From the NCBI RefSeq assembly GCF_003918875.1, contig NW_025767132.1, forward strand, positions 496,001-560,000: DNA of 64,000 nt. The letters are read 5' to 3'. This DNA comes from Haliotis rubra (Eukaryota). Shown piece by piece: positions 1 to 64,000 of this stretch. Every line of letters begins with the position of its first letter. Positions within the stretch are counted from its first letter, which is position 1. Below the pieces are notes generated by a model. It did no database searches, was not told the origin of the DNA, and saw nothing but the letters and a program-made list of their open reading frames with translations. Position numbers and translations under genes: made by a program.

Positions 1-685
1 CTAAGCACAAGTGCTCCGAGGGACCGGGATTCCCGAGCAATGTGGTGTTCAGTCACTACCTTCACAAAGTGAAAGGACGCAGCTTAGCGAGTGTAATCAG
101 TCGCATCGCCACGATTTCCAAGGTACCCCCGTAATAAAAGTCTAACGACTAGTATCGGGCCAGCCCCTGCTTCGCAAACAACCCCCACAGACACCGTCCC
201 AAGGAGGGTGAAAGGGTAATTGAATCGGAAAAACTCATTTTAACGTTCAGTACCACAACATCATCTTATGACTTCCACTACTTACCACAGTAAGATCACA
301 TAGATGTGTATAGGTACATAGGAGCATGAACGCTACGAAGTGTAACACTTCGGGAATGACTCACTTCACTGACGTAATTACTCCGTGGAGCAGAGGACAG
401 TAAGTGAGGTGGCGACCCTCCAGCGTCTCAAAAGCGAGACATGCGATGGTTAGTTCGAACCCACTGACTTACTAAGCACAAGTGCTCAAGGGACCGGGAT
501 TCCCGAGCAATGTGGTGTTCAGTCACTACCTTCACGAAAGTGAAAGGACGCAGCTTAGCGAGTGTAATCAGTCGCATTACCACGATTTCCAAGGTCTGAC
601 GACCAGTATCGGGCCAAACCCTGCTTCGAAACAACCCCCACAGACACCGTCCCGTGGAGGGTGAAAGGGTAATTGAATCGGAAAT
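1..685 (+). other. Structured non-coding module of DIRS family A, in tandem (471-bp period; second copy partial)
   Basis: ctaagcacaagtgctc recurs at 1 and 472; many hairpins; homologous to 9979-10420 with compensatory substitutions. Confidence 0.7.
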
Positions 686-3210
686 CTCACAAGTCCCTGG
701 AAGAATCGAAGACACAAATCAGAAATAAAATTCAGAATTTTATTCAGATTGTACACAAAGCAGAAATGATCGCAACTGGTGATCACCTGCGCTGAAGCTG
801 ATGGTTGTCCCGAGTGCCGAACAGGTCTACATCTGGTCGTGATAACAGGTAGATCTTTGATTGGAAGATCAGAGGCAGTTGTTTCCACTCCGTGAGTGAC
901 AGGGCATCGGCAATGGCATTCCTCATCCTGGGAATGTGTTGGGCTCTGGCCACTGTGTGGAGTGAATCGATCAGATGATAAATTCGAAACATCAACTGAA
1001 GCAGAGCTGCTGATTCTGTCGACCCCTGATGGTTTATGTACAAAATTACCATCGAAATGTCTGATTGAGTATATGAGTGAACCGTAGTTCAACTGCCCAA
1101 TGCCGAACAGCGAGAATGACAGGGCTGAATTCCAATTCGTTGTGATGAAGGGCCCTTTCTCCTGATGACCACTGCTAGGCCACTTAATGGAGAAAGTGAG
1201 CGTCCCAGCTTGAAAGATGTGTCAACGAACAGGTGTTGAGTGGGTATGAAGGGCACCATAGAGACTCCAACACAAACATTCCACTTATCCACGAAAGACT
1301 GAATGTAGTTGTGCAGGAAGACGAATCAACTCCCTGGGGTTGTCGTCCCCGATGTATGGGCACAGAAACATCTGAAGAGGGCGAAGCTGCAGCTGGCCCC
1401 TGTAAGTCAGCTTGTGCCGACGTCAACCACCCTAGTAACTTCTGCTACTGGAGAAAAGTTCTGGGTTGGACCAGCACTAGTGGTGCGTTGCACTGAATCT
1501 TGTCCCACCTCTCCTGGGGCACAAACATCATGACCTGTCGTGTTGAATATTGTCCCAATAAAAAGAAATCATCGGGTCGGTGTTACCTCCGATTTCTCCA
1601 AATTCAGCAGCCATCCTAATTGCGTGAGCAACTCGATGATGAACTGCCTGTGGAGAGGAAGGACTGGATCCTGCTGGGCTTGAACACAGTCGTCGATATA
1701 GTTCTCCAATGTCACACCTCGACAATGCAGGTAGCTTGTTATCGGATTGGGTATCTGAGTAAAAAGCCACGGGGCCGCACATATGCCCATACAGCAGGAC
1801 ACTCCATTGGTATCAATGACGCCCCTTGAAGGTAAATCGAAGATACTTCCAATAGTCTGGATGTATCCGGATGTGAAGGTAGGCGTCTCGCAGGTCGAGG
1901 GACTTGAGAGGTCTAACCACTCTTGCCTCTGACAAAAACATATCTCCTGATATAAGAACGTTCAATAAGTCGAGCAACTACGTCAGTTCTGACGGAGCGC
2001 TCAATGTAGTATGTTCGGCGCATGGAAATTGTCAGTCAATCTACAGGAACGTTCACATTGTAAACGAATTGAAGAAACTCGTACGATCGGTGACCCCAGG
2101 AACGTTTCGGTTGGCCGAACAAAATGATGGTTCGCCAGGTGGAGTGATAAAGGTAGTAGATAGCTGCCTGGTGACAGTCCTTGCATAACTGCAGTGACCT
2201 CTGAACTAAGTGCTTGAGCTAGTCAAACCGTTCACGGGTGTTTTTGTCTGTCACCCTCGATAAGCAGTCTCTCTCGACTGGCTGTCAAAATCCCGACACA
2301 ATCACTCTTACCGGGAATGGCAGCGTTCATTGTTACTAGCATTTAAAGGCTGGACTTGGTATCCGATTCGTGAATTGTTTCGGTGGGATGAAACCGTACG
2401 AAGAGGAGAACGGTTATGTTCCAACCACGCCGATCCACGATTCAATGATGAATGCTTGGATTTAGAAGTTTCCGAGGACTTTGAACGGTCCGAAGAAACG
2501 GATCTACGAGATGAAGTAGATCGCAGGTCTTGTGTAGAGGAAATATCAGTCATTACCACCCTCGCATGCCCATGAGAACTTGAGCTAGGTGAGGAAAGCG
2601 TCCCAAATGCCTTTTAACATTCTCAGACAAATAGGAATCAGAAGAAGCGTCTATAAAATCTTCTTTAGGATACACGGGAGATTTAGAACGGCGAGCAGGT
2701 AGGGTGGGGCGATGTGAATATTGTTTTTAGCGATAGATGGACCAGATCCCGCATAAGCATTCCTGGCCCTATCTGCCAAACGTCTGGCACAAGCACGTTT
2801 GTAAGCTTTAAAATCCTCATTAGACAGTCCTGAACACTTAGGACAACGTTTGTCCCAATCACAACAACCTACATAATCAACACACGATGTGTGTGGGTCC
2901 CAAGCTGAAGAAACTTTATTATGCTGAGCGCACAAGAACAGGCTTAACCATGTTGAGCAAATATCAGATGAAAAAATTTCACGTCCACTCTGTTGAGCAA
3001 CAAGAAAGAGAATGAGTATGGAAGGTGATCACGTGGGTGAGGACTGCGCATGCCACGTGCTGTCACGGCCAAGTGAGCATGGCTAAGGCAGGAAGGCATG
3101 CACAGCACGGGGACAGGGACAAGGAAGGCCTGGAGCAAAGTTTAATACGTTTCCACTCATGGTCGAATGAAGAGAGAGAGGTGCAAGTCGTGAGATAGGA
3201 TAAGTTTAAA
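1..3210 (-). mobile_element. DIRS1-type retrotransposon, family A, internally deleted (no YR in the visible part), runs off the left edge
   Basis: 5' ITR ~3001-3210 related to 15008-15230; gag Cys/His motif DPHTSC..CPKC (2651-2935); RT remnants LDLRDAYLHI and YIDD (~1530-1910); RNase H (LFVDTS, INHQGS); MT-like DLF motif (~800-830). Many frameshifts. Confidence 0.9.
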
Positions 3211-3660
3211 AATGTGTGATTGTATTTATTTTCAAAGGGATTTATCATTGGGTTATCTGCAATAATCTAAAATTAAGCTATGAAAGCCTTTTCCTTTTTG
3301 TCATGTTTATAGTTCTCAAAAAGGTCAATAGGTTAGCGTACGATTTCATTATTTTTCACTATCTGCACCGTGCAAACAAATAATATCACTGTCACTGTCA
3401 GAACAGGATTCCCTAATAGCAGACTGAGAAGGATACTCCTGACCAAAGTCACTATCTCTAGTACTGCTCCCAATACCGCATGTCTAGAGGATTATTTTTA
3501 CAGATGGTTGCTTTTCATCAATAATGTCTTCTCTCGCTTGATTGCAGTAGGCAAAATCAATTTGTTCACCATTACAAGTGACATATTACACAGTGACCAC
3601 TGACCTTCCATGAAATGTCTAAAGATAGTGTACACAATGTGAGGTTTAGTATTGATTTAT

Positions 3661-4137
3661 CATCCTCGATAATCTCCAGGACATACGTTACGATCACTCT
3701 CCACTATACCTTGGATGCATCCACGGCTTGGCCCGATGATTATTTGATTACCTCCCTTGGCTGTCTTTTTATCTAATGAGGTGTCTACACTGGGAAGTTG
3801 AGCGAACCAATCACAACTCAATTTTGCTCCATAAATTATCTAACCGTTTAAACTTGGCAACACAATTGATGCACAGGTACTCTGAAAGAGGAAGGAGTTC
3901 TTTCATATATTTTTTTAAAGATTCAGATCTGTCAATTTGTCTGTATTATTTCCCCCAAAATTTGAGTGGCACTGCGAACAAACCCCGCGACTGCGACCGC
4001 TATCTCTGTTGACACTGGCAAGCTCGGATGTAACGGCGGCTTCGCTGATTGGCTACTGTGAGGATACGGAGCCGTGGATGCATCCAGGGTATAGTGGAGA
4101 GTGATCGTAACGTATACCCTGGAGATTATCGAGGATG
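3661..4137. mobile_element. MITE with 9-bp TSD (Mutator-like)
   Basis: ~67-bp TIRs (catcctcgataatctccagg.../...cctggagattatcgaggatg); TSD ttgatttat at 3652-3660 and 4138-4146. Confidence 0.85.
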
Positions 4138-4210
4138 TTGATTTATGGGCACAAAAAAGACTGGTTTAACTTCCAGTAACCAATTCTCTTCATACACATG
4201 ATAGGAAAAC

Positions 4211-4377
4211 TGACTGACTGACTGAGTTTAGTTTTACGCCGCTTTTAGCAATATTCCAGCAACATCACGGCAGGGGACACCAGAAATGGGCTTAACACAT
4301 TGTGCCCATGTGGGGAATCGAACCCGGGTCTTGGCGTGACGAGCCAACGCTTTAACCACTAGGCTACCCCACCGCCC
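4211..4377 (-). mobile_element. tRNA-derived SINE (family 1)
   Basis: A box (tagcctagtgg) and B box (ggttcgattcc) on the minus strand, (TCAG)n-type tail, 12-bp TSD tgataggaaaac; homologous to the copies at 6097 and 39461. Confidence 0.9.
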
Positions 4378-4669
4378 TGATAGGAAAACACTTATTTATA
4401 CCAATTTATACCAATGAAACTGATGGAATGTACTTGTGGTGGAAAATGTTTAATGCACTGTGTGCAGCCTGACAATAAAAGCTACCTACACTAGCAATAT
4501 TGTACCCGCACTGGTGCAGCCTGGATATCAATCAATATAGAAATCAATCCCTGTAGCTATTACTATAAATTAGGAATTGTAATTGGAAACGTAATAATTC
4601 CAATTTGGGATTTTTGATGGATATTTCCTTTGGATTGAACATATTACTATATGTTTAGTTCTCCAGCTA

Positions 4670-25761
<21,092 letters not shown>

Positions 25762-37484: not shown

Positions 37485-40400
37485 TTATTTCCAAGAACTT
37501 CGATGCCGAACACGGCCACGAGGAACACTTTCAGAAGACATTGCTGATGATAAAGGGACACCGCTCTGTGGCTGTCGTCGGCTTGACGTGTCCCTGCGAA
37601 TGGTACGGGGGCAGATGTTCCCCATTGACGCCCGACGAGCCAAAGACGGTGTCGTCTGCTGTGGCGAGCCTACAATCTTGTTGTTCTCACTGACGGGGGG
37701 TAGCACTGTGGTAAGGACACCACGAAGCTTCCTTGTGTGTTGACGTCGTCTCCCAGCCCCTCTGCGGCCCCCAACACAACAAGACGGCAATCTAGGGACA
37801 AATGTCCCTCCCATTTCCTCATCCACTCGAGGTTTCTCCATATGGATTTGCATGTCCGTCATATTCATGAGTTTCCTCAAAGCTTTGTTATCGCAATGAA
37901 CTTGCGAGAGAGATTTCCTAAGTTTCTTGTTTTCGTCTTCAATGCCCTTCATTTGAGCCTCGGTGTTTTTAATCTCGTCTGGGTAGTTATCCATCCCATG
38001 CAGCTTGGCCTGGAGGTCCTCCAACTCCGCCTGGTCCATCATCCAACTCACTTTATAGTTATTGCATTCAAGTCGGTAGTGATTCAGCTCCTTCCGGAGC
38101 TTTGCGTTCCTCTTCTGCTCTAGGCGGAGTTGTCTCCCCATTTCCTGAATCTCCTTTCTGTGCTCCTTGCTGAGGTTGAAGATATGGTCAATGACGCTGA
38201 AATATTGAACAAGAGGCCAAGAGATTAAGTAGCATATCATGGAAGCGCTGAAAGGACCTGATGAAAGAAAATTTATCTTTAGCGCACGAGTTAGTATGTT
38301 GAGTCAGGGATAATCTACAACGTTATATAGTCTCCCTGGTTGAGTGCACAAGTAAATATACTGAGCGCACAAGTTAGTTTTCTTGAGCGCACAAGTTAGT
38401 ATGTTGAGCACACAAGTTAACATCTTGAGCGCACAAGTTAATATCTTGAGCGCACAAGTTAGTATGTTGAGCACACAAGTTAACATCTTGAGCACACAAG
38501 TTAACATCTTGAGCGCACAAGTTAATATCTTGAGCGCACAAGTTAGTATCTTGAGAGCTCAACTTCGTGTTAGCATCTAATGGCATTAATGGAACGCACG
38601 TTTGCTTGACTGTTGTAATGTACAAACTTATATCCTTTTGGAAAGATTTCAAAAGATGCAAAGGGTTAACTATAGGTGTTTATGATGAGACTATGTAAAA
38701 GTATCCAAATGTATCATGAACATTGATAATGTTTATGTAAACGTTCATCGTCTTTATGCTTGACAATACTATTCTTGCTAACTGATTTTACTACTTTTTG
38801 CTTTATTACATAAATCAGGCCCAGGTATGTGTAATGTCATAATAAAAATTAAAACATAAACATGAGTAGGAGTTTATTGCAAGAATGAATAGTGGTTTTA
38901 CTGGCTTTTAATATTGGTACAAAGTATTATAAACACTAGCGTAAAGCTTGGATATCTTGTTTTGTGCTACGGCTTTATTATGTATATATAGTATTACATT
39001 ACCATGAAAAATGTAAACATTGAGTGTTATACTTAATTATAAAACTCATGTCTGATGTATTGAGTTTAACTCTGTACAATATCATTTAAAATCCACCGTA
39101 TTTATTTGATCCTTTAGTATGTGCACGTATAGCACATATACCGACTTTATTTCTTACTAAAATACCATGTTCCCCGTTTTACTTTCTCCGTTTCAATCCC
39201 TTATGTATACGTACAAGTGTATGTGTGTTGTAGTTTATTTAACATGTTTTAACAACACATGAAGTTGACGAATAAACACGTCGATAAAGACAGTGTCTTG
39301 AGCGAAATTCAACGCCATCGGGGTCGAACACTATTAGCAACGAACGTACACTATCCTGTTTCACGATTAAACCGCATTGGATACATTTTTATGCATCCAA
39401 CGATAACCATGTCTTTGTCCAGATCGTCGAAGTTGTCCGCAATAAAATCTTTAACATCAGCGGGGCGGTGGGGTAGCCTAGTGGTTAAAGCGTCCGCTCG
39501 TCACGCCGAAGACCTGGGTTCGATTCCCCACATGGGTACAATGCGTGAAGCCCATTTCTGGTGTCCCCCGCTGTGATATTGCTGGAATATTGCTAAAAGC
39601 GGCGTAAACCGTACTCACGCACTAACTCACTGTAGCATCAGCAAATCTGGTATCTGGTGCGAAAGAGAGACATACACCTCAGAATACGCTTCAAGTGGCG
39701 TACTATACTATGCCATGATGTTTGACAAGAAGATGTATTATATCTTTGTTTTGGAATCAAAGACTGAAATAAGCATGAATCAGATCGCGTTTCCGCTCCT
39801 CCGTTGCTTCCACATGAACTGCTAATGGAGTAGTGTATCTCAAGATGCTAAGTTGAGCGCTCAACATACTAAAGTGTGCGCTCAATATATTAACTTGTGC
39901 ACTTACGATAACTAACTTGTGGGCTCAAGATACTAACTTATGCGCTCAAGATACTAACTTGTGCGCTCAATATATTAACTTGTGCACTCAACATACTAAC
40001 TTGTGCGCTCAAGATGAATTTTATTTCATCAGGTCCCTTCAGCGTTTCCGTAGCATATACTTGGTTTAATTAAAATATTTTAAGTACACTAAAGAGAGTA
40101 ATTTCTTTAATAACAAATGATCTGATTACATACAATGTCATAACTGGTGGTATGACCAAAGGGGAAAGAAAGGCACAGGTCTAGCATCTCTCACCGAATA
40201 TATCCTAAAGTTGACTTGTTTACTGACGTTCCTCAATTCTCTTCATATCAGTAGATATGCATGGAGGACAGAAAAATTGTATGTGAAAGCTCGAGTTCTG
40301 CTCGAAATGAACATTTTGGCTTAATTTACAAGTTAATTCATATTAAGGTTACAGACTTCTGCACTCACCTTTCTTCTTCTTTATCCATTTGACATGTTGG

Positions 40401-58628: not shown

Positions 58629-58981
58629 TGATGAAAATAACATAGGACTGGAAATTTTAACTATAAATTGTATATTTATATACTTATCCTATCTCACGAT
58701 TTGTTCTTCTTTCTCTTGCTTCTACGCTGAGTGGAACGAAAATGAACTTTTTCTGGAGGCTTCTCTTGTCTATAACGCCTGTGTTCCCCAGCCTGCTCTC
58801 CTTATAGGCAGGTCCTTAGTCCCTTGCTAAGCGTGCAGCACGCTCCCCTATCTACCCACGTGACTACCTCAGAGTGATATTCTCTTCTTGGAGCCAATGA
58901 GAGTTAACTGTAACTGTCATAATCTGAGTAGAGGGGAGGCTGGGTGGGCATCCTTCGCATGAAATAGGATAAGTATATAAA
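58629..58981 (-). mobile_element. 3' ITR and partial ICR of a DIRS family A copy, interrupted by the family C element
   Basis: Aligns closely to 9666-9975; 58958-58981 (catgaaataggataagtatataaa) is the reverse complement of its own ITR near 58675-58698. Confidence 0.85.
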
Positions 58982-59277
58982 ATGTAATTTTCTGAATAAA
59001 ATTGATATTTTATACTTATCCTAACTCATGCTCTTTTGCTTGTCTTCTTCTTCTTGCGAACACAGTGGAACACTTGTATCTCCCAATTGAAGCTCCCCTT
59101 CAATGTAAAATCACTAATTAGTAATCACCAAGAGTTGTCTCCTTCCCAGCCATTTGCGCGGGAACGAGGGTGCCACCTTCCGCCACATGCCTCACTCTCT
59201 CCTTATATAGCGAGCCCAACACTTGAATTTTCAGGGAAATCCAAAGTGTTATGTGGGGAGGATGGGAGGGCTTACTT

Positions 59278-59362
59278 CATGAGTCAGGATAAGTATAAAA
59301 TATCAATTTTATGCAGAAAATTACATATTTTTCCTTATCCTGACTCATGCTCTTTTGCTTGT
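59278..59362 (-). other. ICR of DIRS family C
   Basis: 59278-59326 is the reverse complement of the terminus 58982-59030; the remainder (atttttccttatcctgactcatgctcttttgcttgt) repeats the ITR core, as expected for the start of the 5' ITR. Confidence 0.88.
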
Positions 59363-59399
59363 AGAATCCTACGGATACGGAGGTGGGAATACAGAATAC

Positions 59400-59823
59400 T
59401 TTGGATTTAGATAATTAGTGATTTGATAACTGTAATAACTGTAATAACCCTTATGGGAACTTCATAAAGGCACTGAATTAATAATTCCTGCTGTTAAGCT
59501 TATCAGCTGCCATATATGGGTTACTACAATATATAGATATTATGATAAACATAAATAAACTACTCCTAATGGAGAAGTTAACTAAAGTATTTACAACATA
59601 AATACTAGGCTTAAGACTAAGATAGACTTAAGCTTGATAATATAATAGCATAAACTTCATAGAGTTGTTAGCTAATGATATTGTTATGATATAACAGACA
59701 TAGTACTGAGCTTAAGATTATGATTGGACTTAAGCTAAAATATATAATAGCCGCATTAACTTCGTGGAGTTATTAGCTATATAGTACTGTTGTGAAATAA
59801 GCAGTAAAAATCTCGTAAGATTG
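59400..59823 (+). other. AT-rich hairpin array of DIRS family C
   Basis: About a dozen closely spaced short inverted repeats between the ICR and the YR stop. Confidence 0.65.
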
Positions 59824-59825
59824 AC

Positions 59826-60893
59826 TTATCTTCTCCGAGGGACTGTCAACTGCTGTGCGAAGACCATGGGACCGAAATGGTGAATGCCTGAGACGTCCTC
59901 GGTGGTGATATCTCTCAGATAGTGGTTGGCAAACACCATATCGGATCTCCAGAAGCAGCCCTCCATGATGGTATTCAAAGAGCAATTGCCGTAGAGCAAG
60001 TGTTGAAGATAGCGCCTAATTTCATGTGGATTAGATGCTCTTGGAGGGTCGAGTCCTGCAGCCTTGTAGGCAGAGTATGACAGTTCTGATCCATATCGAG
60101 ATACTTGTACATGAGATTTCAGTCTGTGTAGCTGTCGATAGAGGGATGAATAATCGTTTGAGTTTTTTGTTGCCTCAGTTTGGATCGCCGTAGATATATT
60201 TTCAGTGTTCTGACTGGGCATAATGATAGATCCAGTTTATCATGAGGTCCCAGAATTGATGAGAGAGCTGGGACGTGGAATAATCTGTCTGGTTGACCTG
60301 GCAACTGGTTCTTGGCGATGAAATCAGCGTAGTCCCATATGCATGATGTTATGATTGTCATCAAAGCGTGTTCTCTCAGAATCTAGTGCGTGAATCTCTG
60401 ACATCCTGGCTGCTGTTGCTAGGGATAACAGGAACAAAGTTTTCTGTGTCAGAAATTGAATGATGTTGATTCCAGTGGTTCATATGCCTCACTTGTGAGG
60501 TGTTGGAGCACTATATTTAGATCCCATGCTGGAGCCAAACCTCTGTTTCTGATCCTCCGATCGGAATGCACGTAGTAAGGCGAAGTAACTCTGGGGTCTT
60601 TGTCAACTTGACACCCATTCTCATAGTTATGACGGAGCTTAAAAGCTGCGTAGATATGTTGATAATGTTGAGCCTTTTAGACGCGTTTAGTCTGTCGTGA
60701 GGTAACATAAGTAGTCAGCCACTTGTGGATGTGTAGCATTTCTAGCTGTAAATCCTTTCTTTGCAGCATAATTTTCAAAACTGTGCCACTTGTCATCATG
60801 CAAGTTAGTGGAGAAGCACGCAAGGCAAGCGGACTGCTTAGCTGCTCTGGCTGAATAACCTCTTTTGTTTAGACAAGCCTTAATACAGTCCAT
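59826..60893 (-). pseudogene. DIRS tyrosine recombinase (frameshifted)
   Basis: FIAKNQLP, LCPVRTLKIYL, NPHEIRR, CFWRSDMVFANHYLRD; homologous to 10521-11230. Confidence 0.87.
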
Positions 60894-60899
60894 ACGTGA

Positions 60900-62754
60900 A
60901 GTTGGAATGCTTCTGGCTTTCGCGTGCTTGTTTGGTGTGAGGATGTATTAGTAGATTCGAGCGCTTTGGAAGTTGTAGTATTGGTTGTCCCGATTTCTTG
61001 AATAAGAGTTGGAAACAACGTTCTGGCTGGCCAGTAGGGCGCCACCAAAATCATTTGGAGGCTCTGAGTTTGCTTGATTTTCTGTAACACCTGTGGGATT
61101 AACGCTGGTGGCGGGAATGCGTCTAGCGTTGAGTCCTTCCCACGATATGCTTAGTGCGTCCGTTGCCCATGCTAGTGGGTCTGGGACTGGTGATACGAAT
61201 GTTGTCAGCCGATTGTTGAAGCGAAAGTGGCAAATAGGTCTATTAGTGGAGCTCCTATTTTCTTGATAATTTGTGCTTAATATCTCTGTATGGAGCATCC
61301 ATTCTGTCGGCGATGGTAGGTGTGGCCGAGAGAGCGCGCCTGCTATTACATTCTTTGCTCCTGGAATGTGACATGCTCTGACATGTATGTTGAGATTGTC
61401 GATTAAATCGAACAATTGAAAACATAGAGTCAATAGGTTCGGGGACCTGGTTGAGCCTTGTTTGTTCACATAAAATGCCACTGTTGAATTGTCTGTGTGA
61501 ATCATCAATTGGGCATTCTTTAGTAAGTTGCTCCAATGATGTATGTATGCTTACTACTGCTTGCATTTCTAGCAAGTTTATGTGTAGTTTGCTCTCTTGT
61601 TGGCTCCATAACCCTGATGCCGTCCTGTTGGCGAGGTGTGCTCCCCAACCTTGGAGCGACGCGTCTACATAGAGATGTGTTTTCAATTCCGGCTCTATTA
61701 AACAGATTCCATCGCAAACATTCGATCTCTTGGTCCACCATAGTAGGTGAGGTTTGACGTGATTCGGTAGACTGAATGGTTGAGGTCACCGTCGAGATGA
61801 GAGTTGATGAGGACCTGTAACGGACGTAACTGTAGTCTGCCTCTGACTGTCATGTCTTGAGCTGACCTGAGTAGACCTAACAGGCTCTGCCATTGTCGTA
61901 GTGGTAGCGGAGAGAGTAAGGCTTGAGGGATTGTCTGTTGGATCTTGATCCATCGGTCCTCCGGTACGACGATACGATTCTGCGCCGTGAGAAATCGAAT
62001 GCCTAGAAATTGCAGATCTTGCGTAGGTTCTAGGTCCGACTTGAGTAGATTTACTAACCATCCTATCTGTGTTAGTAGGTTGATGATGAGGTTTAACTGT
62101 AGTCTGAGACGCTGTGGATCTGGATCCACTTGTATCCCGTCGTCGAGATAGAACGCACTGCGTAGTCCTTGACGATGTAGGTAAGAGACAATAGGTTTCG
62201 TCACTCTTGTGAATAACCAGGGGGCCGATGAGATTCCGAAAGGTAGTACTTTCCATTGGTAATGCAGCCCGTCTAGTGTAAACCGAAGGTATTTCCTGGA
62301 GTCGGGATGTATTGGGATGTGTAGATATGCGCCTTGCAGATCTATGCTGGCCATGTAGTCTCTGGGACTCAATTAAGTGCCGTAGTTGTGGTAGGTGTAT
62401 CATCCGAAACGCTGGTGGTTTGCGTAAATAGTCTCTGTTGAACGTGCTCATATTGTAGATGAGACGAAACTTTTCCTTGGAATTTTTCTTGGGCACTAGG
62501 AAAACTGGGGAGTAGAAGCCTGGTTCGATGTTTACTTGGTCCAGTACTTCTATGGCCTGCTTGGTTAGGAGCGTTGATACCGCTTCTCTTAACTTTGGTA
62601 GTTGTAGAGCCTGGGAGTCGAACCTCGGAGGGATGACTGTCAGCGGGGGCGTGGCCTGTAGTTGTATTCGATATCCGTGCTGTAGGATGTTGGAGACATA
62701 TGGATCCTCTAGGAATCCCCAGTTTTCCCAGTGCAGTTGAAGGCGTCCCCCCAC
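60900..62754 (-). pseudogene. DIRS pol: reverse transcriptase - RNase H - methyltransferase-like domain (frameshifted)
   Basis: Motifs are distributed over ORFs 61786-62754, 61698-62372, 61255-61686 and 60948-61508. Confidence 0.9.
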
Positions 62755-64000
62755 TTGTGATGGTTGTACTGGAACGGCTGGGGGTGGAAGACTCCAGTCG
62801 TTCCGAACCTGTCCTTCATCGTTTATAGTTGCGGGAGTCTCTGGATGACCTGCCTCTTCCGGATCCTCCCATGTAATTGCCGTAAGGGCGGCGAAAAGAC
62901 TCTTTTGCTCCTCTTACACTTGCCATCTTCCTGTCCCGTGCTTTCTGTAGACCGGAGAACTTCGATTTGCCTGAGTACCTCTGCGAAGTTTGTCTGATGC
63001 CGCTTGCTAGCGTATCCATAGACTTTATCATGAGCACCTCTCTTGAGAGACTTCTTTAGAGACTTTGTCTATGTTTCCATCGAAAATTGACGGTGATGAC
63101 CACGGGGCTGTGTGGAGTGATGCGGTGAAGTTATCACCCCAATTACAGGAGGCGAGGAGACCTTGACAACGAGCCATAGTTATAGCTGCGGATAGTGCTG
63201 TCAAGTGATCCGTTAGGAACTGCTGGTCCTTCTTCTGCATGAGGAGGGCCGAGTAAATCATCCTGTCGTCCTCAGATGGTCATCTATTCTGTAAGTCTTG
63301 GACTTGGCATCGCTGATCATCTTATAGTTATCACCGATATCTTGTGCCTTGTAAAAAGGGTCCATGTTGTGACCTGCAAACTTGTTAGCGTTGAAATGCG
63401 GCACATGTGGTGTCTGTGATTATGTGGCTTTACTAAAGGCTGTATCCAGATTAGCTGGCACCGCTGCTATCGGGTCAATCGGAGGTAAGGTGATTGTGTC
63501 AGCATCATCTTCCTTCATAAGATATGTCTGGGCTGAGTTCTCGTTCTTAGACGGGGAGGAAAGTTCCAGACTATTCACGATCCAATATCTTATTTCTGCG
63601 TCGGAAAATACGATACCATCTTCATCTTCAGACATCGGGTCACAGATAATGTGTTGATGCTCCTCCGATAGTGACTGAGGTGGAGTCCTTGATGATCTGT
63701 ACGTGGATCGAGGAGGTGATCGATGAGGAGATCGGCGAGCAGAATAACGTGGTGAACGGACTGACGAGTGGCGTCTATAAGGTGACCTTCGCGGAGACTT
63801 GCTTGGCGAACGCTGGTAGCTTCGCGAAGCTCTCGGTGAATCCCTTAATGATCTTCTAGATGAGGATGACTTGGAGCCACTTAACCTTTGTGAAGGCCTT
63901 CGTGAAGGTTGAAAGTCTGAGTCGGAGTCATGGGATGAGAGGATCTTGCTTCGCGAACGTCCTCTCTCATCAAGGTCCGAGGTAGGTGATATAGTCGTCC

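What the first reader, a model, noticed from the sequence alone, without database searches (positions are those of the whole stretch)
1..470. Conserved, covarying structured non-coding module in the 3' region of DIRS1 retrotransposons (family A)
Seen: 1-440 and 9979-10420 are diverged homologues whose substitutions preserve pairing: TGCTC/GAGCA vs CGCTC/GAGCG; CCTTCAC-(g)aaa-GTGAAAGG vs CCCTTGC-ataa-GCAAGGGG; GCGAgTG-taat-CAgTCGC vs GCAAG-taat-CTTGC; GTC-taac-GAC vs GTC-ttat-GAC; CAA/TTG vs CAG/CTG. Both keep long-range stems TGTGGTG/(C,T)GCCACG, CGATTT/GAATCG and CTCACT/AGTGAG, plus a possible bulged pairing ACGTyCAGT/ACTGACGT. Known: DIRS1 elements are described as ITR-gag-RT/RH/MT-YR-ICR-ITR, and I know of no described large folded domain at this position. 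Inference: a ~430-nt functional nucleic-acid structure, such as a catalytic or scaffold domain used in cDNA circularisation, second-strand priming or packaging.
Basis: partly seen in the sequence, partly recalled or inferred. Interest (0 to 1): 0.9.

Follow-up and report, generated by a model that had tools for sequence, protein, structure and literature searches.

The report
Hairpin-rich 3' UTR module of DIRS retrotransposons
A ~440-base non-coding stretch between the recombinase gene and the end repeats of two related DIRS retrotransposon families keeps a string of stem-loops through compensating mutations, so it is probably a cis-acting RNA signal, but its job is untested and there is no sign that it is catalytic.

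Summary
The observation largely holds. Window 1-438 and 9979-10420 are homologous (about 75% identical), non-coding, and lie on the antisense strand of DIRS1-like elements, between the tyrosine-recombinase gene and the ICR and right ITR.

Several local hairpins (H1, H2, H3, and three more in the second half) keep pairing through double substitutions. Tests against shuffled alignments, shuffled substitution placement and neutral singleton mutations all favour selection for pairing. The signal is somewhat stronger on the element's sense strand.

Corrections:
- The unit starts 33 nt before the window.
- 439-692 is a partial second copy of it.
- Family A is a deletion derivative without the recombinase's catalytic half.
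- The module occurs in 1, 1.6 or 2 copies, sometimes with arrays of hairpin H1.

Not supported:
- The long-range stems are either uninformative or invariant.
- There is no single robust 430-nt fold and no Rfam or ribozyme match.
- No homologue exists outside two clades 26% apart.
- RNA evidence is inconclusive.

Best reading: a cis-acting structured 3' UTR domain of the genomic RNA, recognised by element proteins. This is inferred, not shown. First readers noted similar hairpin arrays elsewhere in this genome (s1-344958, s1-349470, s1-325332).

The parts
1..237 (-). Family A module, first part (repeat unit R1). Its first 33 nt lie upstream of the window, at L001 1468-1500.
   Evidence: window 439-692 matches L001 1468-1739 at 86-88%; more than 40 near-full copies in the genome.
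238..438 (-). Family A module, second part (U). It holds the long hairpin S8, the hairpins S10 and S9, and an invariant 24-nt block.
439..692 (-). Partial second copy (R2) of the first part of the module, directly abutting the truncated recombinase region.
   Evidence: 87-88% identity to R1; nhmmer E 1.4e-56.
6..44 (-). Hairpin H1. Outer stem 6-16/35-44, inner stem 20-24/30-34. This is the piece that is multiplied in ~120-nt tandem arrays in AB-type elements.
59..75 (-). Hairpin H2, 7 bp. Three pairs changed on both sides between the clades. Intermediates are G.U on the sense strand and C.A on the antisense strand.
87..104 (-). Hairpin H3, 4-5 bp. Pair types are GC:15 and AU:12, with further paired variants in single copies.
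241..335 (-). Long interrupted hairpin S8, about 32 bp. Its apical loop holds GGUAAGU on the sense strand.
   Evidence: helices 7-9: 93-99% of cells paired; pairs UA/CG and AU/GC.
336..352 (-). Hairpin S10. Two pairs changed on both sides: GC to CG and UA to CG.
   Evidence: helices 5-6.
360..408 (-). Hairpin S9, about 16 bp.
   Evidence: helices 2-4.
693..3231 (-). Decayed internal part of the family A element. It lacks the segment homologous to B 10421-11385 (the recombinase C-terminal half). A left-ITR remnant lies at 3117-3231.
9714..9975 (.). Right ITR of the family B element. In this copy the ICR between the ITR and the module is missing.
   Evidence: inverted repeat with 15008-15224, 87-95%; other B copies have the ICR.
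9979..10420 (-). Family B module, a single copy.
10521..11484 (-). Remnants of the tyrosine-recombinase ORF. It ends about 100 nt upstream (in the sense direction) of the module.
   Evidence: weak Phage_integrase match, E 0.0053; homologues at 59844-60538; Phage_int_SAM_1 in a sister copy.
15008..15249 (.). Left ITR of the family B element.

Best explanation
The module is the structured 3' untranslated domain of the genomic (sense, window minus-strand) RNA of one lineage of DIRS1-like retrotransposons. It begins about 100 nt after the recombinase stop. It ends about 150 nt before the ICR and right ITR. It folds into roughly ten mostly local stem-loops: H1, H2 and H3 in the first part, and S8, S10 and S9 in the second.

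I propose that it works in cis as a recognition platform for the element's own proteins, the reverse transcriptase and/or Gag. That would serve template choice or packaging. It would explain why deletion derivatives that have lost half the recombinase keep it, duplicate it and carry arrays of H1 while spreading to hundreds of copies.

Shown: homology, position, non-coding nature, an excess of compensated pairs, copy-number variation, and retention in non-autonomous families.

Inferred: that the RNA, and specifically the sense strand, is the active form; that proteins bind it; and which step it serves.

My odds that the pairing is under selection at all are about 0.6. My odds for the whole statement are about 0.4.
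For: Anatomy:
- ITRs are at 9714-9975 and 15008-15249.
- The ICR is 98% complementary to the ITR outer end.
- The order ITR, ICR, module, recombinase is seen in sister copies.
- Recombinase and RT/RNase H domain hits lie on the minus strand.

Non-coding:
- 12-15 of 14-17 internal indels are not multiples of 3, and every frame has 3-10 stops.

Structure:
- RNAalifold on six natural copies against column shuffles gives z -4.95 (sense) and -3.89 (antisense), with 0 of 60 shuffles as good.
- I took the structure from one family's MFE alone and shuffled where the A/B differences fall. Kept pairs were 103-119 against 88-102 expected. Compensated pairs were 7-10 against 3-4 expected, p about 0.001 on the sense strand. 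The result holds with 40-nt block shuffles.
- Clade-level differences keep a standard pair in 52-55% of changed pairs. Private singleton mutations of dead copies do so in 28-30%. Fisher p is 0.004-0.02 on the sense strand and 0.006-0.41 on the antisense strand.
- In H1-H3, 90% of cells are paired against 34-51% with partners slid. There are 68 double-change cells against 33 in shuffles.
- For the whole module, 92.8% of cells are paired against 35-45% slid.

Strand:
- H1 and H2 go U-A, U.G, C-G through abundant G.U states that would be C.A on the other strand.

Retention:
- A and AB elements lack the recombinase C-terminal half but carry 1.6 or 2 modules, plus about 2-14 H1 units.
- First-look searches gave 600-700 candidates. 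All 150 scored covariance-model hits reached at least 103 bits.
- The module is about as conserved between the families (73-78%) as the coding sequence (74-79%).
Against: - There are only two clades, 26% apart, so few independent events. The excess rests on about 5-6 extra double substitutions.
- One-sided changes alone are not significantly enriched, by my reading.
- Sense and antisense consensus folds share only 16 pairs, and each strand uses about 30 wobble states.
- Single-sequence z-scores favour the antisense strand: -2.99 and -2.54 against -2.19 and -0.88.
- Subfamily differences within B, judged on the A-only fold, give no support: 4 canonical against 9 broken on the sense strand.
- A third DIRS family in the window has no homologous module.
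- The runs that cover the module are only guessed to be RNA, and contigs show no strand or ends.
- Nothing ties the module to a protein or to a step of the cycle.
Confidence: 0.4

Rival explanations
1. The stretch is a neutral, hairpin-rich spacer. The double changes come from mutation, not selection. Template switching by the reverse transcriptase or a polymerase within inverted repeats re-copies one arm from the other. The stretch simply rides along with the ICR and ITR that the element does need.
For: The signal rests mostly on double changes clustered in a few hairpins. H2 alone has three, which one arm-copying event could create. Both strands give signals. Differences within B show no preference for pairing. 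The global fold is not robust. This mutational mechanism is known from the literature on template-switch mutations; that is my own knowledge and I did not check it here.
Against: Arm copying makes perfect Watson-Crick stems. Yet H1 and H2 carry abundant G.U states that are tolerated on one strand only. Compensated pairs occur in at least six separate helices. The spacer is as conserved as the coding sequence. It is duplicated rather than lost in the derivatives that spread.
Confidence: 0.2
2. The structure acts in the single-stranded minus-strand cDNA (the window + strand). This is what the first reader proposed. Possible roles are protecting cDNA ends, helping ICR-guided joining, or priming the second strand.
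For: The + strand folds better than shuffles as RNA (z -2.99 and -2.54) and as DNA (z -3.47). The antisense alignment z is -3.89. DIRS-1 accumulates linear single-stranded cDNA (PMC7192593, read).
Against: All alignment-based tests are weaker on this strand. The abundant H1 and H2 variants are C.A mismatches here. The only + strand-specific stem, TGTGGTG/CGCCACG, is uninformative. The module lies near the 5' end of the minus-strand cDNA, not at the 3' end where self-priming would occur; this is inferred from the anatomy.
Confidence: 0.12
3. The module is a host-factor element in the sense RNA. It would resemble the export or stability elements found upstream of the 3' LTR of some retroelements. 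Alternatively it is a U1 snRNP docking site that prevents premature 3' end processing before the ICR and ITR are transcribed.
For: The position is the same as those elements. The tandem multiplication is typical of them; this is my own knowledge, not tested. The only long invariant block (24 nt) presents GGUAAGU, a perfect 5' splice-site core, in the apical loop of S8 on the sense strand in both clades.
Against: No splice joint was seen at that site in the contigs laid. A 7-mer has a few percent chance of occurring in 440 nt. Nothing links the module to any host factor.
Confidence: 0.13
4. The module is a self-cleaving or otherwise catalytic RNA.
For: Only the size and the conserved unpaired blocks.
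Against: No match to any Rfam family, including the known self-cleaving ribozymes, on either strand at E up to 10. No discrete ends were seen in the data laid, but contigs cannot show ends.
Confidence: 0.03

Closest known systems
Structured 3' UTRs of non-LTR retrotransposons that their reverse transcriptase recognises (R2 3' UTR; 3' stem-loops of 'stringent' LINEs and their SINE partners). From my own knowledge.
   Same: It is a non-coding 3' domain in which secondary structure is conserved more than sequence. It is kept by non-autonomous derivatives that borrow the enzymes.
   Different: This is a different order of elements (DIRS, tyrosine recombinase). The module is not at the RNA's 3' end: the ICR and ITR follow it. 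No binding has been shown, and there is no sequence or Rfam similarity.
RNA transport elements upstream of the 3' LTR (MPMV CTE, IAP RTE, MusD MTE). From my own knowledge.
   Same: It lies between the last ORF and the terminal repeat. It is a few hundred nucleotides of stem-loops, and internal duplication is common.
   Different: There is no homology, and no evidence of export function or host-factor binding here.
The known cis elements of DIRS1-like elements: ITRs, ICR, extensions, and the small 3' hairpin in DIRS-1 mRNA that Poulter and Goodwin noted as a possible primer (PMC3266345, PMC7192593).
   Same: Same element type and the same end of the element. The ICR and ITR geometry is present and adjacent.
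   Different: The module is separate from the ICR and ITR, much larger, and absent from the descriptions in those papers. It is not shared by another DIRS family in the same window.
Split direct repeats of Ngaro and PAT-like elements.
   Same: In family A the order R2-U-R1 looks like B1-A2-B2.
   Different: The elements have inverted terminal repeats plus an ICR. U is not repeated at the 5' end of complete elements. The R duplication is absent from family B.

Membership tests
DIRS1-like retrotransposon (the context of the module) | Inverted terminal repeats | tested here: met
   9744-9959 against 15008-15224 is inverted at 87-95% identity. The same ITRs occur in sister copies.
DIRS1-like retrotransposon (the context of the module) | Internal complementary region next to the right ITR, complementary to the ITR outer ends | tested here: met
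   L001 1262-1316 is 98% complementary to ITR 951-1005. It is followed by a copy of the next ITR stretch. This ICR is 87-97% conserved in B copies. It is missing from the window's own B copy.
DIRS1-like retrotransposon (the context of the module) | Tyrosine recombinase and RT/RNase H encoded on one strand | tested here: inconclusive
   All copies are decayed, and every hit is below Pfam's cut-off: Phage_integrase E 0.0053, Phage_int_SAM_1 E 4.3e-4 and RT_RNaseH E 1.4e-4. All lie on the minus strand in the expected order. The methyltransferase was not looked for.
Any Rfam family, including self-cleaving ribozymes and tRNA-derived RNAs | Covariance-model match | tested here: not met
   cmscan of window 1-12000, both strands, E up to 10. 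Nothing credible falls in 1-700 or 9979-10420. The only hit there is a structureless lncRNA model at 19.8 bits, E 4.3.
Cis-acting structured 3' UTR element of a retroelement | Non-coding, between the last ORF and the terminal repeats | tested here: met
Cis-acting structured 3' UTR element of a retroelement | Secondary structure conserved through compensatory change | tested here: met
   Support is moderate: only two clades, and local hairpins only.
Cis-acting structured 3' UTR element of a retroelement | Needed in cis, or bound by element or host proteins | not testable with these tools
   There is only indirect support: the module is retained and multiplied in non-autonomous derivatives.
Ngaro or PAT-like split direct repeats | The unit between the 3' repeats is repeated at the 5' end, and there are no ITRs | tested here: not met
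   A complete AB element (L066) has U only in the 3' region, and has ITRs at both ends.
Protein-coding remnant | Frame-preserving indels, open frames, or a protein domain | tested here: not met
   (indels and stops); the 72-aa ORF at 10207-10425 has no Pfam hit.

The most novel reading that the evidence does not exclude
The module is the long-sought cis signal that starts DIRS reverse transcription or selects its template. On this reading it is a multi-hairpin platform, with H1 as the repeated binding unit, that recruits the element's RT or Gag. Parasitic deletion derivatives would multiply H1 to out-compete their autonomous parents. A weaker form of the claim is that hairpin arrays between the recombinase gene and the ICR are a general feature of DIRS elements, convergently evolved and so far undescribed.
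Probability: 0.12. Interest if true: 0.75.

Novelty: new variant of a known kind. Interest (0 to 1): 0.42.

Why it matters
How DIRS elements begin reverse transcription, and how their RNA is chosen for copying, is unknown. PMC7192593 states that no primer has been determined. The only cis elements described are the ITRs, the ICR and the extensions. A conserved, compensating stem-loop domain that non-autonomous copies keep and multiply gives a concrete candidate to test by binding and mutagenesis. It would also give annotators a fourth landmark for DIRS elements.

The reach is limited. The evidence comes from two related families in one genome, plus a second species label. The function is inferred only.

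Tried and rejected
- **Known RNA families.** An Rfam scan of 1-12000 on both strands at E up to 10 found no family.
- **More distant homologues in the window.** An nhmmer profile of A plus B found only the three known copies.
- **More distant homologues in the genome.** A covariance model of H1-H3 (R1) was searched over the genome. All 150 scored hits were A or B copies.
- **Ngaro-like split direct repeats.** This reading of R1-U-R2 was rejected.
- **tRNA or SINE origin.** The GTTCGAACCC-like stretch at 452-462 gave no tRNA hit.
- **Decayed ORF.** Rejected.
- **Long-range pairing with the upstream RNA.** Duplex energies between the module and the rest of the element were no better than with shuffled modules.
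- **Strand test on pairs common to both strands' folds.** It had no power, with only 16 shared pairs.
- **Subfamily differences within B on an A-only fold.** No support either way.
- **Expression.** The runs that hold the module are only guessed to be RNA and are kept as contigs, so strand, ends and level cannot be read.
Judged uninformative.

Statistics used natural copies and per-pair counts only.

Full report
**What is at the coordinates**

Window 1-438 and 9979-10420 are homologous: 72.9% identity over 442 nt, E 2.8e-55 (alignment).

The window begins inside the unit. The locus that extends the window upstream (L001; window position 1 is L001 1501) shows that window 439-692 matches L001 1468-1739. 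So the repeat unit starts 33 nt before the window. Family A therefore reads R1 (-33..237), U (238-438), R2 (439-692). R2 is an 87-88% partial second copy of R1.

**Context**

The ORF remnants lie on the minus strand, so the window + strand is antisense to the elements.

- Family B has inverted terminal repeats at 9714-9975 and 15008-15249.
- Upstream of family A, L001 951-1255 is the right ITR.
- L001 1262-1316 is 98% complementary to the ITR's outer end. A copy of the next ITR stretch follows it. This is the ICR geometry of DIRS1-like elements (described in PMC3266345 and PMC7192593).
- Protein evidence is weak because every copy examined is decayed. Hits are Phage_integrase E 0.0053 at 10987-11484(-), and Phage_int_SAM_1 and RT_RNaseH in sister copies. 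All lie on the same strand in the expected order.

Sister copies of family B (L035, L037, L047, L052) give the canonical order in window orientation:

1. right ITR
2. about 45 nt
3. ICR
4. about 150 nt holding one extra H1
5. module
6. end of the recombinase ORF

The window's own B copy has lost the ICR.

Families A and 'AB' lack the segment homologous to B 10421-11385. That segment encodes the recombinase C-terminal half and has protein homologues at 59844-60538. So A and AB are deletion derivatives. AB elements read ITR, ICR, about 2-14 tandem ~120-nt units each holding H1, a B-like module, an A-like module, then the truncated recombinase.

Copy number is in the hundreds. First-look searches gave 697 and 626 candidates, and all 150 scored covariance-model hits reached at least 103 bits.

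**Not coding, and not a known RNA**

- Between A and B, 12-15 of 14-17 internal indels are not multiples of three.
- Every frame carries 3-10 stops, and substitutions show no clear three-base periodicity.
- The one 72-aa ORF has no Pfam hit.
- Rfam gives nothing credible on either strand at E up to 10.

**Diversity available**

The 81 full-length copies I could collect fall into two clades. A has 51 copies about 6% apart. B has 30 copies about 9% apart, with subfamilies. The clades are 26% apart.

A third DIRS family in the window (about 59000-64000) has no homologous module. The covariance-model search found only A and B copies. Independent evolutionary events are therefore few.

**Is the pairing more than chance?**

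1. *Consensus folding against shuffled alignments.* RNAalifold on six natural copies, compared with column-shuffled alignments, gives z -4.95 on the element's sense strand and -3.89 on the antisense strand. None of 60 shuffles did as well.
2. *Where the A/B differences fall.* To avoid letting the folding program pick covarying columns, I took the MFE structure of one family alone. I then asked whether the other family's differences respect it, against shuffles of where those differences fall.
   - On the sense strand 103-119 pairs are kept against 88-102 expected (z +3 to +5).
   - 7-10 pairs are changed on both sides yet still pair, against 3-4 expected (p about 0.001).
   - The antisense strand gives weaker values.
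   - Shuffling only within 40-nt blocks, which keeps local conservation, gives the same picture.
3. *Dead copies as a neutral baseline.* Private singleton mutations at paired sites leave a standard pair in 28-30% of cases. Clade-level differences do so in 52-55% on the sense strand (Fisher p 0.004-0.02). On the antisense strand the figure is 32-47% (p 0.006-0.41).
4. *Tool counts.*
   - For H1-H3, 90% of cells are paired against 34-51% with partners slid. There are 68 double-change cells against 33 in shuffles.
   - For a whole-module sense structure, 92.8% of cells are paired against 35-45% slid, and 17 pairs changed on both sides against 12.7.
   - That structure was derived from these same sequences, which inflates the comparison.

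**Which helices carry the signal**

| Helix | Window coordinates | Pair types seen |
|---|---|---|
| H2 | 59-65/69-75 | UA:18, CG:14, UG:3; CG:17, UG:12, UA:6; AU:17, GC:17. Four of the seven pairs are standard in all 35 rows on the sense strand |
| H1 | 6-16/35-44 and 20-24/30-34 | UA:18, CG:9, UG:8 and GC:16, GU:7, AU:6 |
| H3 | 87-91/100-104 | GC:15, AU:12 |
| S10 | 336-352 | GC to CG and UA to CG |
| S8 | 241-335 | UA to CG; AU to GC in three B copies |
| Middle helix | 179-188/214-222 | AU to GC |

**Which strand?**

In H1 and H2 the abundant intermediate states are G.U on the sense strand and C.A on the antisense strand. All alignment-based tests are somewhat stronger on the sense strand.

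Against this:
- Single-sequence z-scores favour the antisense strand.
- The two strands' consensus folds share only 16 pairs and use similar numbers of wobble states.
- Subfamily differences within B on an A-only fold show no preference.

I take the sense RNA as the more likely active form, with modest confidence.

- TGTGGTG/CGCCACG pairs only on the + strand. Its first arm is all G/U, so any transition in the partner keeps pairing. Its 97% pairing is therefore not evidence. It also competes with the CACA/TGTG base of H1.
- CGATT/AATCG is invariant. The adjoining CAA/TTG to CAG/CTG is one true compensatory change, so this closing stem is possible but rests on a single event.
- ACGTTCAGT/ACTGACGT is invariant and competes with another invariant pairing.
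- No pairing between the module and the upstream RNA exceeds shuffled controls.

The picture is a string of local stem-loops, not one demonstrated 430-nt fold.

**Expression**

Two small runs guessed to be RNA hold contigs that cover the module and the adjacent coding remnants. One 1-kb contig runs unspliced through the GGUAAGU site. The runs are not on record as RNA, and contigs show no strand or ends. A second species label also holds related copies.

**Mechanism**

Shown:
- a non-coding 3' domain, about as conserved between the families as the coding sequence;
- an excess of compensated pairs;
- retention and multiplication in deletion derivatives that must rely on enzymes supplied in trans.

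Inferred: it acts in cis on the genomic RNA as a protein-recognition platform for template choice or packaging, with H1 as a repeatable unit.

The literature I could search describes no such domain and says that priming of DIRS reverse transcription is unknown. Rivals are mutational arm-copying in a neutral spacer, action in the single-stranded cDNA, a host-factor element, and catalysis. Their odds are given in the report sections.

**Verdict**

This is a lineage-specific, probably selected, hairpin-rich 3' UTR domain of DIRS1-like elements. It is an undescribed variant of a known kind of retroelement cis element. There is no evidence for catalysis or for the specific roles proposed. Other first readers of this scan noted similar hairpin arrays in DIRS 3' regions elsewhere in this genome; I did not test those notes.

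Noticed in passing
window 439-692 and L001 1468-1500: Family A carries a partial tandem duplicate of the module's first 270 nt. The unit starts 33 nt before the window.
   Followed up: yes
window 693-790 versus 10421-11385; L065, L066, L067: Families A and AB lack the roughly 1-kb segment that encodes the recombinase C-terminal half, yet have hundreds of copies. They look like non-autonomous derivatives mobilised in trans.
   Followed up: partly
L065 7600-9322; also L066 7520-8190 and many loci: Tandem arrays of units of about 120 nt (116-124), in about 2-14 copies, lie between the ICR and the modules of AB elements. Each unit holds hairpin H1 plus about 60 nt of other sequence.
   Followed up: partly
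window 9975-9979: The window's family B copy has the module abutting the right ITR directly. The ICR and about 200 nt seen in sister copies are deleted.
   Followed up: yes
window 58649-59360: An ITR plus partial ICR of a B-like element (58649-58990) is interrupted by the right end of a different DIRS family, with its own ITR and ICR (about 59000-59360).
   Followed up: partly
window 59345-59840: The 3' UTR of that other DIRS family is AT-rich and has its own ~110-nt tandem repeat with CTTAAG palindromes. It folds better than shuffles on both strands (z -3.09 and -3.01). It is unrelated in sequence to the A/B module but sits at the same position.
   Followed up: partly
window 270-293 (sense strand), and 10245-10268: A 24-nt block is invariant in both clades (ATGACTTCCACTACTTACCACAGT on the + strand). 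On the sense strand it puts GGUAAGU, a perfect 5' splice-site core, in the apical loop of hairpin S8. No splice joint was seen there in the contigs laid.
   Followed up: partly
window 720-745: The palindromic AATAAAATTCAGAATTTTATT lies at the junction between the truncated recombinase region and R2. It reads AATAAA on both strands.
   Followed up: no
window 4205-4388, 6083-6266, 39463-39628: Three copies of a ~150-180-nt repeat occur here, two of them inverted 1.8 kb apart. One holds a sub-threshold tRNA match (4308-4373 minus strand, 24.1 bits). This is probably a tRNA-derived SINE.
   Followed up: no
L069 4159-4692 (minus strand): An rve integrase core domain (E 3e-8) lies inside a family B copy, presumably from a nested LTR-type element.
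   Followed up: no
runs X8-X10 (organism B): A second species label holds 23-28% of the sampled 31-mers of window 1-700, and contigs at 88% identity or more across the stretch. The family is therefore shared with a related species.
   Followed up: partly
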